DNA of 64,000 nucleotides from Podarcis liolepis (lineage: Eukaryota): NCBI GenBank assembly GCA_965112155.1, contig OZ218103.1, one strand, 5' to 3'. The notes below the pieces were generated by a model. It made no database searches and was not told the origin of the DNA. It was given only the letters and a program-made list of their open reading frames with translations. Positions 12,548-28,446 of the stretch are shown piece by piece. Both the position numbers and the translations under genes were made by a program. Position 1 is the first letter of the stretch. Each line of letters begins with the position of its first letter.

Positions 12548-15500
12548 GTAAATAGCTTTGCTGCTAAGGAAGACTGTAGCATTTTCTATTAAAATCAATT
12601 GGAAGATTATCTAATAGGAAAATGTTTTCATTCACTTGGTTGAACTGAAAATATAGAATCCCACACATTTTAAATCCTACTGGGAATATATTTTGTTTGA
12701 TGTGAGTTTGCCACAGAGATCCTGACAATTAGAATAGAGAGAAGAAATGACAGGAACACTGCATCAGATCTCACTTTGATACTGAGCCTATCAACATCTA
12801 GTGTATCATTCACTCACTGGCAAAGCACACATTCAGTATATATTTCACAGTTACTGGCTGGAATTAGGAAATTTAGTTGCCAGCACCACCAAATCACCAT
12901 CCTGTTCAGCTTTCAGCTGTGTGTGTAAAATGCTTTCATTAAACCATTCAAACATATGGAAATATACAACTCCAGGCCTACACAAATCAATGGAAAATAC
13001 ACAGAAACCTTGGTGTTATGATCTAAAAACAAAAATCTGCATAACCCATTAAGCAATTCCTCATTTGGGTTCATTAACTTTTTTTTTTAGTGCTAAAGCA
13101 CTAAAATTCAATATATTGTGATCTGCATAGGAACTTCAGGAAAACACGTTTGACCTGTATAACAATTCTCTGTAGGCCAAAAATATATAGATTCTTTATG
13201 CAAATTATGTGCTAAGGATAGGAACCAAACACTGCACTTTTCTTACATAAATGTTTAAAAAAGAGAATTTTTAAAAAGTTGTTTCTGATTTGTGTGTAAA
13301 CAGTTTTGAATTTTTATTTTCTAGCTATGAAATGGCTATGGAATGTACTTTTTTCCCTTGAAAATGTACAGTATGTAGTAATTATTTGTGTCATAAAAGC
13401 AAGAAAATAAATCATGTGTTACCCATCAACTTTACTAGTTGCTGACAACCTAATTGCTGCTGGGAAATGCACTTTATTATAAGCATGTGGGGGGCGGGGA
13501 AACCATACGAGATGCAAGAGCCACAGACTGGGGGTTTCCACACTTCCAAAGTACTGCCATTTGCTACCTTCTCTACAGTGTCATGGCATTATTAAAAGAA
13601 TTCTCATAACATTTTATATTTACAAAAAAAACCTGGCAAATTTCATTCAAACTCCTTAAAGCCATTTCCCCTTAAACATTTAAAGAGTTTTATGGTAAGT
13701 TTTTTTTTTCCTTTTTAATTTCAAGTTATAAAATAAAAATCCCATTTGAATTTTTCTGATGTACAAAAAGTGATAAAGATGAACAATTTGATCACAGAAT
13801 CAGTTTCAAAATTCATGCCATCTTCATCTTGGTTAATAAAGTCCATCCCAATCAAATCCAGAAAGCATACTGGAAGTATTTGGCAAACAATTTTTTTCTC
13901 TCTCTCTCTCTTCAAAAATGGCACACAGAGAAGAAAAACACTTGTCTGCATAGCATTACAGCAGCAAGATATCAAAGAAATAAAAAATATTCCTTTACTG
14001 GTCTTTGTTTTAAGAGTCCCCTAGGAAATAACACTGTTAAGTCTTTTTCTTCTTCTTTTTCTTCATCAAAATATTTGATGTCCTTTTCTACCCACAGCAG
14101 AAGTATTCAAAACAAAAAAGCAGCATTTCATCTCTTTGATGTACTGTAATTTCAAAAGGTCCATTTGGCAACGTTTCCCAATCAAGATGGATAATCAGCA
14201 GAATGGCAATCCATGGTTTCAAGTTAAGGATAATTTTCACAGGAGGCGTTTTGCTGCTAGAGTCTGTCACCTGTCTGTAAGAAAAGGGGATAGAATGGAA
14301 CACTCAAATACTTTGTCCCCCCCACACCTTCAAATATGCCATTATGGAGTAGTATTGGGCAGTGGTGGTGGGGAATACAGCCAGATCAGTCTAATATGGT
14401 GATAAAAAGTCACCATATCATCAAAATGTGCAGCCACAGAGCTCAATGGCTGTAGAATTCATGATTTTTTTCCTGCTTTTTTATATTATTAAATGATTAG
14501 CAGTCCTTTAACAGATTTGAACTGATTACTTCCATAATGTGGTGCACTTGAAATGGCAAAAAAGTGACAAGGCGTGGTGGGATATGCTGGATAGTTGAAA
14601 CTTGAGGAAAGGTTTTGCTTGGATATCAGAACTGTGGAACAAAACAAAAGTGTCATGTTCTGCCATAGAGAGTTGCCACTGGTTGCCAAAACATTTTGCT
14701 TGTTGAACTGATGCAGTGAGGTGATTATCCTTTATTAGATGAGATCAACTGCAAGAAAATGTGGGAGCCAAAGGCCTGTCAAGGCTGTAGTTTTCTGTTT
14801 GAGTCTTGAAGCACCACAAGCGTGGGTCAACGCTATTTCTTAGGTCTGTTGATCTGGGCATAGAGAGGCTCTCTTTCCTGGGAACAATAGAAAGAAATGT
14901 GAATAGAGACAATTCTAGTCATTTGTATCTAAGCAGCAGATTTCAAGGGAGTAGGTAAGTAGAATAAAAATGCTAAAGATAGCATTTTTATTATTTTGAA
15001 TTATGATGGTGTTTGAAAAGGCAGTAATAATATAAAAGGAATCAGCAATTCCACATTGTTTATTAAGAACCCAATGTTTAAGTTGAAACGATTATAATGA
15101 AATAGAATTCATGTACATCTCACACTACAATTGAGACCAGAAGAGGCTAAGTTTGCAATTATTGTTTTTAAACACACAGAGCAAATCGGCCCATTGCCCT
15201 CACACCCTGAAAGACGATTCAAGACAGCTGACTAAATGGTAAAAATATTATATTTATTAAAATGTAGCAAAATTAGAGGGTCTGCCAGTTAAGCAAATAA
15301 TTAAGTGTAGGCAGGTGGAATCGATGAATGCATATGAGAGAAGCAACCCTCTATCTCATTGGAATGTAAGCCATTGCATTGTGAGTCCCAGGACTGGGAG
15401 CCAAGGACTGGGAGAAAAATCTCCCTTTTTGCTGAGCAAGCCTTGGGTATGTGAAACCCAACCTGCACACCTGACTCTTCCTGCGGGGCATTCATCATGA

Positions 15501-22677: not shown

Positions 22678-24574
22678 TATATACAGAGGCAGCATAAACA
22701 AGATCATTGAGTGAAGATAATATAGCTTCCAAGTGCATCACTGAGTGCAACAGAACCCTGTGTTCATGCCAAGTTTATTCACTTCCAAATTCTAAAGCCG
22801 TCTATAAATATGAAGACCTCTCTCTCCCCCTCTTACTGGGAGAAGATGCTTAGCATTAATGAAGTAGGACTGAAGATATTGGGCCTTGTCACAGTTTTAA
22901 CTATTGATCATAGAGAACAAACTTGGACTATTCGCCCTCTAAATATTGTGGTAGCTTCAAGGGAAAAGAACAGGTCCATTCAATTCCTTAATGCAGCAGT
23001 TGCCAACATGGAGCCCTCTAGATAATTTAGGCCTCCATGTTCCATTGGCCTAATGGTAGAGGGTCATTGGAGTTGTAGTCTAAATCATTTGGAGGGCACC
23101 AATTTGGCCATCCCTGTCTTAATGCTTTTTCAGATAGACTATTATTTAACTGTAGATTTCCCCTACCTGATGAAAGTGCGGGAGAGCCAAAACGGAACAC
23201 CTGCTCATCCCTCCCTTTAAACTGTCATAATGCTAATATGGAGCCATACAATGTGCAAACATTAAACAGCAAAGCACAATAGTATAGTTCAAACTGATGG
23301 GGAAAGTGGGATAAAGGAGTATTTTTAAAGAGACAAAGTAGTTATTGAAGAGTTTGACACCCCCTTAGTTGTATACTGCTTAGAAATCTAAAGCCACAAA
23401 TGACAAAGCAAACATTTCAAATTTACCTAGTGAGACTGCACAGACTTCAGGGATGACAGTGGTTTCAGGTGAGGGCAGAAATGGTTTTAGGCTCATGGGA
23501 AAGGGACTATTGGATAGCAGCTAGTACATTCAGATATCTGTGGTTGGAAGCACATTCTTAAAAGCCTGGAAACCGATGCACATTATGCACTAAAAATAAA
23601 TCCACCATTTCCATTAATTTGTTTCATATGCTCCATACACAGAAAGATGAGCAATAAATCACATAGTGCTTGAACTGTTTCAAATCACAGCGCAGTGTAA
23701 TAAAAGAAACATTTTTCATATGGCAGCATTGGAATACATTGAGATGAGATGGGGATGTTCAACACTCACAGGCACTGTAGCATCACAATCTTTCTGACAA
23801 AACACAGATGCCAGAATAAAAATAGCCACGGTCACCCTCATAAAACATCTATCAACACCCACAACATGCAGCGTGCAGTTAACGATTAAAGCAATTGTGT
23901 TGCCTTAGCATTTTGTCATGGAAAATATATATTTAAAATGATAGGGTGGGTTGTTAACCCATAGACATCAACATTGTAATTTAATATTTTCATTAGACCC
24001 TTTAACTAATAGGTTTTCCAATTGACCATTATTGTGGCCACAGAGTGGGAAGGCACATCTTAATTTATGGATGGTGCTTAATTCATTCTCTTAAAAAATA
24101 TGTTGCACTGCTGATGTCATTTCAGTCCTGGATGAACATTGCCTGCCACTTTGCAATTTCTATCAGAAAAAGATAAAATACACAATATACAAATATTTTA
24201 AATGCTAATCATGAATACCAGAAACTGCAGAGCGTCAATATTGTGTAAGAAAAACAACAACTATGAACCTGTTGTTGATAATCTCTCATTTCACAGTTGC
24301 TGTAATATATATTTTCCCTAGGGTTGTATTTTTTTTTTTTATAATTATTCTGACAACACAAAAGTGCACCACCTAGAAACAGAATTATCAACCAGTGATG
24401 CATCAATGGTGTGAGAAGTAGTGAAATGAAGGTATGAAATATTCCATTTTGTATATGTGGAATATATTATGTTTGTGGCTAGCATCAATGTAAATGAAGG
24501 CAGGCAATGGTGAATATGAATAGCTCAAAAGTGACAGAGAGAAAAGGACAGATACCTACCCCAACCTGCGCTAT

Positions 24575-24658
24575 CTAGCTATCGCCCTGTGGACTTACAG
24601 TATCACCAATGGGCTCACCAAATGGATCACTGTTGGATGAGGCCTGAGATCCATCAGG
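24575..24658 (-). CDS. DAB1: DAB1 exon 14, coding part with canonical stop (exon continues 15 nt to 24560)
   Basis: PDGSQASSNSDPFGEPIGDTVSPQGDS-TAG, then ATAGCGCAGGTTGGG|GTAGGT. Confidence 0.95.
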   Translation of the reverse strand, partial: PDGSQASSNSDPFGEPIGDTVSPQGDS

Positions 24659-26575
24659 CTAGAATACAAGAACATAACACCTTTTTTTCTCAACAACAGA
24701 AAGGAAAACAAAGTCAGCAGTTATTTTCATGCAGTGGGTGCATTTTAACATGAATGCCTATTGTGGATGAAAATAATTTAAAAGTCATATACTACAGCTG
24801 ATATTTCCTAGGACCAACTGGTGCCAGTGGGCCAGCCCTGAATAAGATAGTAAACTGATTTGAGCTCACAGAAACAGTTTTTTAGGTTAGTGCATTTTGG
24901 CCAAAGCTAACTTTACCTTCAAGACTTGGTCAAGAAGCAGACAAATGCCTAGTGCATGGCTTCTGCTTTAAGCCTGCCTAATTAGTGGTTCTAGTTTGTG
25001 ATGAGCCATTCATGTGAAGCAGTTGCCATGGCCACATCTGACTATTTTTGCACCGCAACTCAAACCCAGCCAAATATGAGTTTTCAGCAACGTGAGAGCA
25101 ATCTGGATCTGTGTATGGTGCCCATAACTAGTTTGTGGTCATCACAAGCAAATTTGGACACCACAGATCTGAGACCAAGTTGCCATTATCAATGTGAGGT
25201 CATGCTTCTGCTGTCTCCTTGCAAGTGGGGCAGGCACAGAGTCATGCGTTAGCTATTGTATTCACCACTCGTGCTATTCAACTTAAGCCAAGCCATGTGA
25301 TTGTACTGACAGCAAAACGTATCCATATTGTCACCTACCCAAGCCACTACACATTGACCTGTGAAGGGTTGTCCATTCCCAGTATTAAGGTGTATACTTA
25401 CTTTCATTTTCAAATGTCACTGATTCCCCCCTCCCCCTGGGAAATCAAATGTGTTGTGCTATTTTTACAATGTCTGAAGAAATCTGCCAGCTCCTCCCCC
25501 TGGAAACAATCTGGTCATATAAAGCATTCCTGTTGAATGCTAGAAAATGGAGAGCATGGATTCCCTCTTCCCTGCCAATCATCCTCCCTGGCTTGCCCTG
25601 GAGAAAGCAGAGGGAAGAACTCACTACTCCGTAAGATCCTTCCTAGGTTGAGTTCAGCCTGAAGGGGGCAAAACTCGACTCAGACACTATGAGTGCCAGG
25701 GGCTGCATTTTGAACTCCCCCTCCCCATTGCATCACACCAAAGTCTCTGAACTCCTTTGTCTTTCTGCCCCAATATCTTTGTGTTTCTAAGGCAGAGCTG
25801 CCAATTTATATTGGCTACAACGGTGCCATCACACAAAGCTTCGGTGGCACACTGCTTCCTGTTCTTGAAATCTAATTCACAGTTGCTCCTCCTGAATTCT
25901 GTCTCTTCGAAGAGCCGGCAGGAGGAGGTAGATATGGACTAATAAATCATGAGAGAACAATCCAGCAGAAATGTATAACAAGCAGGAACACTCAAATAGA
26001 CTGCATAAGCTGACATGTAGATAAAAATGTTAAATTAATCTGTGCAATCTTCCATTTTGACTTACACATTTTTGGTTCAGCAGTATACATGCTAGTCTAG
26101 CACATATCGGTGCTGATGGGGAAACTGGAAGAGTGAAGTGGGAGCACTGATCAACACTCTGTCCTCTGTAATTTACATTAGTTGTGAGCAGTCAGGAGAA
26201 AATCAGAAGAGTTTGAAGGGTGGGGGAAGGGGGCTGGGTTCATTATTTCTTCTTCTGTTTGATCATTGCATCAAATAGGGAGAAAAATTGAGGGAACATT
26301 TGCGTTCATATCCTAACTCTATTTTTTGTAGGGCAACCTTCATTGCCCAAAGTCAATGTTAAGTGTCTATAATTGGACTAGGAAACACTCCTCTATTTTC
26401 TTCTACAGTCCAATTTTGCTGATTGAATACTACCTTTAATGTGATCTACAGCAAATGTTTTAGTACTCATGCAAAGTAGAATTTGACTAGAATTTTCAAA
26501 ATTTTCAAAACTGTGAACCATGTACATAGTAACTGAGCAGTTTATGGGTTAATGATTTGGAGTTGCCCCACTTAC

Positions 26576-26703
26576 CGCTTCCTGTTCTTCACTTTTACTT
26601 GGACTTTCAAAGCCCTCTTCAAAGAGGTCATCTGCAGCAGGGTCACTGGTATGAGATGCTGAGGATTTGGATGGAGAACTTTGTCTAGGAGCAGGAGTTG
26701 GAG
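26576..26703 (-). CDS. DAB1: DAB1 exon 13 (contains the Cdk5-type SSPSK site)
   Basis: 128 nt, (P)[42 protein letters not shown], ends in phase 0 at GCG|GTAAG. Confidence 0.97.
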
Positions 26704-27897: not shown

Positions 27898-28446
27898 GTG
27901 AGTTCGTCGATGGCGTTGTAGAAGTCACAGGAGTCAAATTTAACTGAGAGATGTCAAAGTCATCACAATCATCTGCTTCCTGTGCCATCCCAACTTTGTT
28001 AAAGTAACTGGAGAAGGCCTCTGAGGTACAACTGAGGGAAGGCTGATCTGGTTTTCGTGATGGCACTGGCGGAGGCTGAGCCATCTGGAAATCTTTGAAC
28101 ATTTCTTTTCCTGCTTGCTGCCTAGGCCTATCTGTCTGCGGACTGGATCTGGTGGAATCGCTTGTAGGTGGAACGGTAGCAATGGGAGCAACGGTACCTT
28201 GAAACATGGCTGCTTGTAAAGGCAATACAGTTTGTGTTGGCATGAAGGCAGCAGGCTGAAACTGACCAGCTACAGATGGCCATGGTTGCTGGGTGGGAGA
28301 AAATATCCCAGGTTGTCCCCATGCAATTGACTGTCCTCCCTGCATCACCTGAGCAACTGGAGGCTGAGCACCCATGGCCAGTTGTTGTTGAACAAGAGGT
28401 TGTTGTCCCCAGAAGGAGGGCAGGACAGCTCCCATTGCAACATAAC
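27898..28446 (-). CDS. DAB1: DAB1 exon 12
   Basis: 549 nt, (G)[15 protein letters not shown]...[11 protein letters not shown]...[22 protein letters not shown](P), aAG / GTGAGT. Corresponds to ORF 27842..28435. Confidence 0.98.

What the first reader, a model, noticed from the sequence alone, without database searches (positions are those of the whole stretch)
14833..14877. Hidden EPLYA (EPIYA-like) phosphotyrosine tail encoded at the start of the 'non-coding' last DAB1 exon
Seen: the terminal exon begins exactly in phase 0 with GAA AGA GAG CCT CTC TAT GCC CAG ATC AAC AGA CCT AAG AAA TAG = EREPLYAQINRPKK*. Exon 13 ends in phase 0, so skipping exon 14 gives ...SEEQEA-EREPLYAQINRPKK*. Established: EPIYA/EPLYA motifs are Src/Abl-phosphorylated SH2-docking sites in Helicobacter CagA (EPIYAKVNKKK), Bartonella Bep effectors, Pragmin and p140Cap/SRCIN1, where they recruit Csk and/or SHP2. 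DAB1 is itself an SFK substrate and activator in Reelin signalling. From memory (unverified), the human exon reads GAG CCA GAG CCT CTG TAC GCG CAG ATC AAC AGA CCT AAG AAA TAG (EPEPLYAQINRPKK*), differing mostly at synonymous third positions, which is the signature of coding constraint. Inference: DAB1 has an under-recognised alternative C-terminus that adds a further tyrosine site and could recruit Csk/SHP2 as a feedback brake on Reelin-Src signalling.
Basis: partly seen in the sequence, partly recalled or inferred. Interest (0 to 1): 0.92.

Follow-up and report, generated by a model that had tools for sequence, protein, structure and literature searches.

The report
Known alternative DAB1 tail, EPLYAQINRPKK
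The 45 bases are real coding sequence for an alternative 14-residue end of the lizard's DAB1 protein, made when the penultimate exon is skipped, but databases already list this isoform across land vertebrates and only its proposed signalling role is untested.

Summary
Window 14877..14833 follows a good splice acceptor and reads EREPLYAQINRPKK then stop. Exon 13 ends in phase 0 at 26576, so skipping exon 14 joins ...SEEQEA to this tail.

It is not hidden. RefSeq/UniProt isoform X2 of lacertid lizards (P0251: XP_028589170.1, XP_033007897.1, XP_053248274.1, A0A670I3D2) maps exon by exon onto the window at 100% identity within each exon and ends in exactly this peptide.

I found 77 annotated DAB1 proteins with the tail: mammals, marsupials, birds, turtles, squamates, a caecilian and Xenopus. 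L, Y, A, I and the last K never vary, while position 2 varies freely. A pig liver cDNA with this exon skip and a 45-nt terminal coding segment was published in 2011.

The tail is therefore a conserved, already annotated alternative C-terminus. The Csk/SHP2 feedback-brake idea is plausible from the motif, which is nearest to the CagA B-motif EPIYAQV and the p140Cap EPLYA. No data here or in the searched papers support it.

Two tests could not be run. 

The parts
14833..14877 (-). First 45 nt of the terminal DAB1 exon: 14 codons (EREPLYAQINRPKK) plus the TAG stop at 14835-14833. Coding when exon 14 is skipped, 3'UTR when exon 14 is included.
   Evidence: Residues 544-557 of P0251 map to 14877-14836 at 100%.
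14878..14907 (-). 3' splice site of the last intron: polypyrimidine tract and the AG at 14879-14878.
   Evidence: 80% pyrimidines at -3..-22.
26576..26703 (-). It ends ...SEEQEA in phase 0 with donor gtaagt.
   Evidence: P0251 mapping. The length equals the 128 nt of pig 'exon 15'.
24560..24658 (-). Exon 14: a 99-nt frame-preserving cassette exon with the canonical C-terminus (...SDPFGEP...GDS) and the stop TAG at 24577-24575. The end at GTTGGG|gtaggt is inferred from homology to pig GTCTGG|gt. An end at CAG|gttggg (24566) would give 93 nt, also a multiple of 3.
24593..24598 (-). Internal GTAAGT in exon 14 after ...GDT, in phase 0. A candidate alternative donor that would also join in frame to the tail; its use is not shown.
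   Evidence: scan note s1-846056. Birds and turtles use a different internal donor, after ...ISPQ.
27899..28435 (-). Most of the large exon 12, used as the search query. 179/179 residues are identical to lacertid isoform X2.

Best explanation
This is the alternative C-terminus of DAB1, already annotated, in a lacertid lizard. Exon 14 is a 99-nt (or 93-nt) cassette whose length is a multiple of three and which holds the canonical stop codon. When it is included, translation stops 9-15 nt before the last exon junction. That is too close to trigger nonsense-mediated decay, and the terminal exon is then pure 3'UTR. When it is skipped, exon 13 (phase 0) joins the terminal exon (phase 0). The protein loses the DPF-containing canonical end and gains 14 residues, EREPLYAQINRPKK. 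This tail has been kept in tetrapods from frogs and caecilians to mammals, with an invariant L-Y-A-x-I core and a basic end, so it is very probably translated and under protein-level selection. These steps are shown or strongly supported. What the tail does is inferred. Most likely it is a tyrosine-based short linear motif that adds one more YxxI-type phosphotyrosine docking site to isoforms that carry it. I put that at roughly 35-40%, with the SH2 partner undetermined.
For: Sequence and phases. Lacertid isoform X2 (P0251; accessions) maps onto the window exon by exon, with 100% identity in the tail and in exons 12-13. One search returned 77 annotated DAB1 proteins with the tail, giving 24 distinct tails across mammals, marsupials, birds, turtles, squamates, a caecilian and Xenopus. 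In the 22 unique 14-mers, L5, Y6, A7, I9 and K14 never vary and position 2 takes 9 different residues. The lizard tail matches the mammalian tail at 13 of 14 residues, which is at least as conserved as constitutive exon 13 (38/42) and more than the canonical exon-14 end. A pig liver cDNA (sDab1-Li, GenBank EF444935) skips the homologous 111-nt exon and stops after 45 nt of the last exon (PMC3044655). For motif function: p140Cap EPLYA/EGLYA tyrosines are Abl substrates and bind the Csk SH2 domain (PMC3561454). The CagA B-motif EPIYAQVA binds Csk, SHP2 and PI3-kinase p85 (PMC4412286). The known Dab1 sites Y185 and Y198 are also YxxI sites; in P0251 they read YQTI and YQYI, and their function is described in PMC4928174.
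Against: Most database isoforms are automatic predictions. No paper found mentions the peptide or a phosphosite in it. The E-P of 'EPLYA' is not invariant: marsupials have ESLYA and Gopherus tortoises have APLYA or TPLYA. Horseshoe bats have lost the tyrosine, and Rousettus and Rhineura have lost the stop. The pig isoform with this tail was only weakly tyrosine-phosphorylated by Fyn.
Confidence: 0.8

Rival explanations
1. The tail tyrosine is phosphorylated by Src-family or Abl kinases and recruits Csk and/or SHP2. This gives tail-bearing DAB1 isoforms a built-in negative feedback on Reelin-Src signalling.
For: E-P-L-Y-A is the p140Cap Csk-binding motif. pY-A-Q-I is nearest to the CagA B-motif EPIYAQV, which binds Csk and SHP2. 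The tyrosine, the +1 alanine and the +3 isoleucine never vary in the 22 unique 14-residue tails.
Against: There are no direct data. SH2 choice depends on the +1 to +3 residues and is promiscuous: EPLYA motifs of AteA bind Crk and RasGAP instead, and the CagA B-motif also binds PI3-kinase and Crk. No paper links Dab1 with Csk binding. Fyn phosphorylated the pig tail-bearing isoform only weakly.
Confidence: 0.15
2. The tail is an extra 'ab-type' site like Y185 (YQTI) and Y198 (YQYI). Once phosphorylated it binds SFK SH2 domains, PI3-kinase p85 or SOCS proteins. It would then strengthen SFK activation or Cul5-dependent turnover rather than brake signalling. It could partly replace Y198 in isoforms that lack that exon.
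For: It has the same Y-x-x-I layout, with an acidic or aliphatic lead-in, as the ab sites in P0251. The ab sites drive SFK activation, degradation and PI3K activation (PMC4928174). The CagA B-motif binds p85. The pig clone combines loss of the Y198/Y220 exons with this tail.
Against: The +1 residue is A, not Q. The co-occurrence rests on a single clone. There are no binding data.
Confidence: 0.15
3. The tail works without phosphorylation. It could be a YxxPhi-type sorting signal for the AP-2 mu2 subunit. Alternatively, the basic RPKK end could affect membrane or nuclear localisation, replacing the DPF motif that is lost with exon 14.
For: YAQI fits YxxPhi. Exon 14 carries SDPF, which the skip removes. 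The terminal K and the basic character are conserved. Both pig isoforms shuttle between nucleus and cytoplasm.
Against: YxxPhi matches are common by chance. The DPF/AP-2 role is recalled from Dab2, not tested for DAB1. There are no localisation data that isolate the tail.
Confidence: 0.1
4. Exon-14 skipping is low-level splicing noise, or the tail is functionally neutral. The conservation would then reflect RNA-level constraint at the start of the 3'UTR (splice enhancer or regulatory element), not protein function.
For: Most isoforms are automatic predictions. Neuronal 3'UTRs can be highly conserved. No dN/dS test was possible.
Against: Conservation follows residues, not bases. All three bases of codon 2 vary freely while flanking codons are fixed, and the stop stays at the same codon from caecilian to mammals (Xenopus has two more residues before the core). 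A cDNA clone exists. In birds and turtles other upstream junctions also read into the same frame, though only in-frame forms could be retrieved.
Confidence: 0.12

Closest known systems
RefSeq/UniProt 'disabled homolog 1 isoform X2' of lacertid lizards (XP_028589170.1 Podarcis muralis, XP_033007897.1 Lacerta agilis, XP_053248274.1, A0A670I3D2)
   Same: Identical protein over every exon present in the window, including the junction ...SEEQEA|EREPLYAQINRPKK.
   Different: Nothing differs. This is the same feature, already annotated by automatic pipelines.
Pig sDab1-Li cDNA (GenBank EF444935; Long et al. 2011, PMC3044655)
   Same: The penultimate coding exon (111 nt) is skipped and the ORF ends after 45 nt of the last exon. 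The upstream exon is 128 nt, as here.
   Different: The pig tail starts GAG CTG (E-L) against GAA AGA (E-R) here. The pig clone also lacks the exons with Y198/Y220 and includes two other cassettes. The authors did not comment on the tail tyrosine.
Helicobacter pylori CagA EPIYA B-motif (EPIYAQVA)
   Same: E-P-[I/L]-Y-A-Q-[V/I], with lysines a few residues downstream. Once phosphorylated it binds Csk, SHP2, PI3-kinase p85 and Crk (PMC4412286).
   Different: It is a bacterial injected effector with repeated motifs. The DAB1 tail is a single host motif at the extreme C-terminus. Its phosphorylation and binding are untested.
p140Cap/SRCIN1 EPLYA and EGLYA motifs
   Same: Identical E-P-L-Y-A pentapeptide. 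Abl substrate and pY-dependent Csk SH2 binding (PMC3561454).
   Different: The downstream residues differ: p140Cap has EPLYAAFP and DAB1 has EPLYAQIN. Those residues decide the SH2 partner.
DAB1 'ab' phosphotyrosine sites Y185 (YQTI) and Y198 (YQYI)
   Same: Same protein, same Y-x-x-I layout after an aliphatic residue and an acidic stretch. Known SFK substrates.
   Different: The +1 residue is Q rather than A. These sites lie next to the PTB domain rather than at the C-terminus. They are constitutive or regulated by different cassette exons.

Membership tests
DAB1 exon-14-skip isoform (alternative C-terminus) | The upstream exon ends and the terminal exon begins in phase 0, with usable splice sites. 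| tested here: met
DAB1 exon-14-skip isoform (alternative C-terminus) | The predicted product equals an annotated or cloned isoform. | tested here: met
   P0251 matches at 100% in the tail and in exons 12-13. Pig cDNA.
DAB1 exon-14-skip isoform (alternative C-terminus) | Junction reads 26576-to-14877 in RNA of this species. | not testable with these tools
DAB1 exon-14-skip isoform (alternative C-terminus) | Tail conserved as protein across vertebrates. | tested here: met
   77 proteins and 24 distinct tails. Across the 22 unique 14-residue tails, L/Y/A/I/K never vary, in tetrapods from amphibians to mammals. No fish was seen. A nucleotide-level dN/dS test was not possible.
EPIYA-like phosphotyrosine motifs (CagA, Pragmin, p140Cap) | Pentapeptide E-P-[I/L]-Y-A. 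| tested here: met
   Present in the window and in most tetrapods. Not universal: marsupials have ESLYA and Gopherus has APLYA/TPLYA.
EPIYA-like phosphotyrosine motifs (CagA, Pragmin, p140Cap) | The tyrosine is phosphorylated by Src-family or Abl kinases in cells. | not testable with these tools
   No phosphosite report was found. The pig isoform was weakly phosphorylated by Fyn and the tail site was not examined.
EPIYA-like phosphotyrosine motifs (CagA, Pragmin, p140Cap) | pY-dependent binding of the Csk and/or SHP2 SH2 domains. | not testable with these tools
   No data; no paper links Dab1 to Csk binding.
ITIM ([ILVS]-x-Y-x-x-[ILV]) | I, L, V or S at position -2 from the tyrosine. | tested here: not met
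   Position -2 is P in lizards, birds and placental mammals. Only marsupials have S there.
YxxPhi sorting signal | Y-x-x-bulky hydrophobic residue. | tested here: met
   YAQI, with Y and I unchanged in all 22 unique 14-residue tails. The pattern has low specificity and does not show function.

The most novel reading that the evidence does not exclude
The tetrapod-conserved LYAQI tail is a genuine sixth, isoform-specific phosphotyrosine site of DAB1 that the Reelin literature has overlooked. The pig study that cloned the isoform says it 'only carries' two phosphorylatable tyrosines. Once phosphorylated, the tail would recruit an inhibitory SH2 protein (Csk, SHP2 or a SOCS protein). Splicing of exon 14 would then set how strongly and for how long DAB1 activates Src-family kinases. 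Bacterial EPIYA effectors such as the CagA B-motif would be mimicking this kind of host motif.
Probability: 0.2. Interest if true: 0.6.

Novelty: already known. Interest (0 to 1): 0.3.

Why it matters
As a genome feature it is ordinary. It is a correctly read alternative C-terminus that annotation pipelines already list for this lizard and many other tetrapods. What remains is a cheap, testable question for Reelin-signalling researchers. A 14-residue tail with a tyrosine kept for about 350 million years, closely resembling known Csk/SHP2/PI3K-docking motifs, has apparently never been examined. In birds and turtles it is predicted on long, possibly major, isoforms. If it is a working phosphosite, DAB1 isoform choice would change signalling output in brain and in peripheral organs such as liver and testis, where the pig skip isoform is most expressed.

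Tried and rejected
1. RNA evidence in this genome. The look-up of sequencing runs listed candidate runs. In the local mapping script they were replaced by N.

I did not scan metagenome contigs with a degenerate pattern, because that could mainly have pulled human contamination, which I am barred from keeping.

3. The first two protein searches. The 50%-identity representatives library gave mostly fragmentary gene calls with no alternative tails. A search whose region included the canonical tail returned only canonical isoforms. Only searches without the canonical tail, or anchored on an alternative-tail protein, found the isoforms.

4. Literature. The peptide strings YAQINRPKK and LYAQINR gave no hits. 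EPIYA plus Dab1 gave one irrelevant paper. Dab1 plus Csk/SHP2 gave no direct link. Bar et al. 2003 (JBC gene-structure paper) is not held.

5. The ITIM reading was rejected because position -2 is proline.

Full report
**Observation.** The finding lies on the minus strand. The plus strand of 14833-14877 gives an unrelated peptide. The reverse complement reads GAA AGA GAG CCT CTC TAT GCC CAG ATC AAC AGA CCT AAG AAA TAG, which is EREPLYAQINRPKK then stop. Just upstream lies a good 3' splice site...tttctttctattgttcccag, with 80% pyrimidines at -3..-22.

On the same strand, at 26703-26576, lies a 128-nt exon ending ...SEEQEA with GCG|gtaagt, in phase 0. At 24658 begins the exon with the canonical DAB1 end (...SDPFGEP...GDS), whose stop is TAG at 24577-24575.

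An open run of 14 codons is not remarkable in itself (p about 0.46). The pentapeptide EP[IL]YA occurs once in the six-frame translation of the window, against 0.04 expected in first-order Markov resamples.

**What it is.** Exon 12 (179 residues, by reference) found DAB1 proteins in the representatives library. A bat DAB1 fragment from that search served as the query for the word-indexed library.

- When the canonical tail was part of the scored region, only canonical isoforms appeared.
- When it was left out, annotated isoforms appeared that go straight from ...SEEQEA into E-x-EPLYAQINRPKK.
- A third search anchored on such a tail returned 77 tail-bearing DAB1 proteins.

These proteins come from:

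- rodents, including mouse isoform X3 and rat X5;
- shrews, horse relatives, cattle, reindeer, bats, armadillo, a macaque;
- elephant and sirenians, with EPLYAHIIKSKK;
- marsupials, with EYESLYAQINRPKK;
- birds, with EAEPLYAQINRPKK, including chicken X14;
- turtles, with ETEPLYAQINRPKK;
- squamates: Zootoca, Lacerta/Podarcis, Hemicordylus, Anolis, Sceloporus, Salvator, Rhineura;
- a caecilian, with KKEPLYAQINRPKK, and Xenopus tropicalis, with ...EEPLYAQIQRPKK.

No fish was seen. That may reflect the search method rather than absence.

**Identity with an annotated isoform.** P0251 is RefSeq 'disabled homolog 1 isoform X2' of Podarcis muralis and Lacerta agilis (XP_028589170.1, XP_033007897.1, XP_053248274.1; UniProt A0A670I3D2). 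It is 179/179 identical to the window's exon 12 and contains exon 13 exactly.

A local exon-by-exon mapping places its residues 500-543 on exon 13, ending at 26576. It places residues 544-557 on 14877-14836 at 100%.

The window therefore comes from a lacertid lizard, and the 'hidden' product is already in RefSeq for that lineage.

**Experimental precedent.** Long et al. 2011 (PMC3044655) cloned two pig Dab1 cDNAs. In the liver form, sDab1-Li (GenBank EF444935), 'exon 16 was excluded ... and it stopped at exon 17'. Their table lists exon 15 as 128 nt ending GAAGCC|gt, exon 16 as 111 nt, and the coding part of exon 17 as 45 nt beginning GAGCTG.

That is the same architecture as here: 128 nt, a cassette whose length is a multiple of three, then 45 nt. 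The pig first codon GAG against the lizard GAA is the only synonymous difference I could document.

By qRT-PCR on other isoform-specific exons, sDab1-Li was highest in testis and liver.

**Mechanism of the switch.** The exon-14 end is partly inferred.

- It is most likely GTTGGG|gtaggt at 24560, homologous to pig GTCTGG|gt. That gives 99 nt.
- The alternative, CAG|gttggg, gives 93 nt.
- Both are multiples of three, so skipping preserves the frame.

With exon 14 included, the stop lies 9-15 nt upstream of the last junction. By the established 50-55-nt rule that is too close to trigger nonsense-mediated decay, which explains how a 3'UTR intron is tolerated.

In birds, turtles and a reindeer entry, annotated isoforms use an internal donor of exon 14 (...ISPQ|E-x-EPLYAQINRPKK). 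Three birds extend exon 13 by VSSNK before the same tail. Only in-frame forms could be retrieved by my search, so this does not count as independent evidence of frame selection.

**Evidence for coding constraint.** Among the 22 unique 14-residue tails:

- L5, Y6, A7, I9 and K14 never vary.
- E3, P4, Q8, R11, P12 and K13 are nearly fixed.
- Position 2 takes nine different residues.

The stop sits at the same codon from caecilian to mammals; Xenopus has two more residues before the core. The lizard and mammalian tails share 13 of 14 residues. That is at least as high as constitutive exon 13 (38/42) and higher than the canonical exon-14 end, which differs in length.

This residue-wise pattern fits protein-level selection better than a uniformly conserved RNA element.

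There are exceptions. Horseshoe bats have ELQPLCADQQT. Rousettus and Rhineura have lost the stop.

**RNA in this lizard.** The look-up of sequencing runs listed runs, including 2026 RNA-seq raw reads of the same species label. No junction evidence could therefore be obtained.

- p140Cap EPLYA/EGLYA tyrosines are Abl substrates and are needed for Csk SH2 binding. That paper also cites CagA and Pragmin EPIYA as binding Csk (PMC3561454).
- The nearest match I found is the CagA B-motif EPIYAQVA. Once phosphorylated it binds Csk, SHP2, PI3-kinase p85 and Crk (PMC4412286).

The partner, however, is set by the residues after the tyrosine. EPLYA-type motifs of the Anaplasma effector AteA, with proline at +3, bind Crk and RasGAP (PMC13753828).

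Within DAB1, the tail's Y-x-x-I layout resembles the 'ab' sites Y185 (YQTI) and Y198 (YQYI). Those drive SFK activation, PI3K activation and degradation. An activating or turnover role is therefore as plausible as a brake.

An ITIM reading fails, because position -2 is proline.

No paper in the library contains the peptide or links Dab1 with EPIYA motifs or with Csk binding.

The pig study measured phosphorylation only with antibodies to the known sites. It used C-terminal GFP fusions, found total phosphotyrosine of sDab1-Li much weaker than full-length, and states that the isoform 'only carries' Y185 and Y197. The tail tyrosine was simply not considered. That is weak evidence against a strong Fyn site and no evidence about Abl.

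**Verdict.** The structural interpretation is correct but already known: it is annotated in this lineage and across tetrapods, and was cloned in pig in 2011. The signalling hypothesis is an untested, reasonable idea. I rate the feature 'already known' with modest interest. The residual value is the cheap experiment it suggests.

Noticed in passing
window 24593-24598 (-): A perfect GTAAGT sits inside exon 14 after ...GEPIGDT, in phase 0, so using it would also read into the EPLYAQINRPKK tail. Birds and turtles have annotated isoforms that use a different internal donor, after ...ISPQ. In this lizard that position reads CAG|GGC and has no GT. No squamate isoform of this kind appeared among the 120 proteins listed.
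   Followed up: partly
window 24560-24577 (-): The canonical stop lies only 9-15 nt upstream of the last exon junction, and exon 14 is 99 or 93 nt long, a multiple of three. It is a frame-preserving cassette with an in-frame stop that should escape nonsense-mediated decay.
   Followed up: partly
P0251 residues 240-260 align here at about 90%, with the mismatches at the ends, where the alignment runs past the exon boundaries.
   Followed up: partly
window 26561-26575 (-), just after exon 13: Three bird isoforms extend exon 13 by five codons (VSSNK) before the same tail. The lizard reads GTA AGT GGG GCA ACT (VSGAT) and runs into a stop a few codons later, so the extension is probably not available here.
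   Followed up: no
proteins P0279, P0289, P0228, P0230, P0260, P0213, P0263, P0265: Lineage-specific decay or change of the tail. Rhinolophus bats have lost the tyrosine (ELQPLCADQQT). Rousettus and Rhineura have lost the stop. Elephant, manatee and dugong share EPLYAHIIKSKK.
   Followed up: no
PMC3044655: The paper that cloned the pig skip isoform says it 'only carries' Y185 and Y197 as phosphorylatable sites, and never mentions the conserved tyrosine in the new C-terminal tail.
   Followed up: yes
window 14731-14736 (-): An AATAAA lies 96 nt after the tail's stop, and further signals start about 1.1 kb downstream. Which poly(A) site ends the terminal exon was not determined.
   Followed up: no
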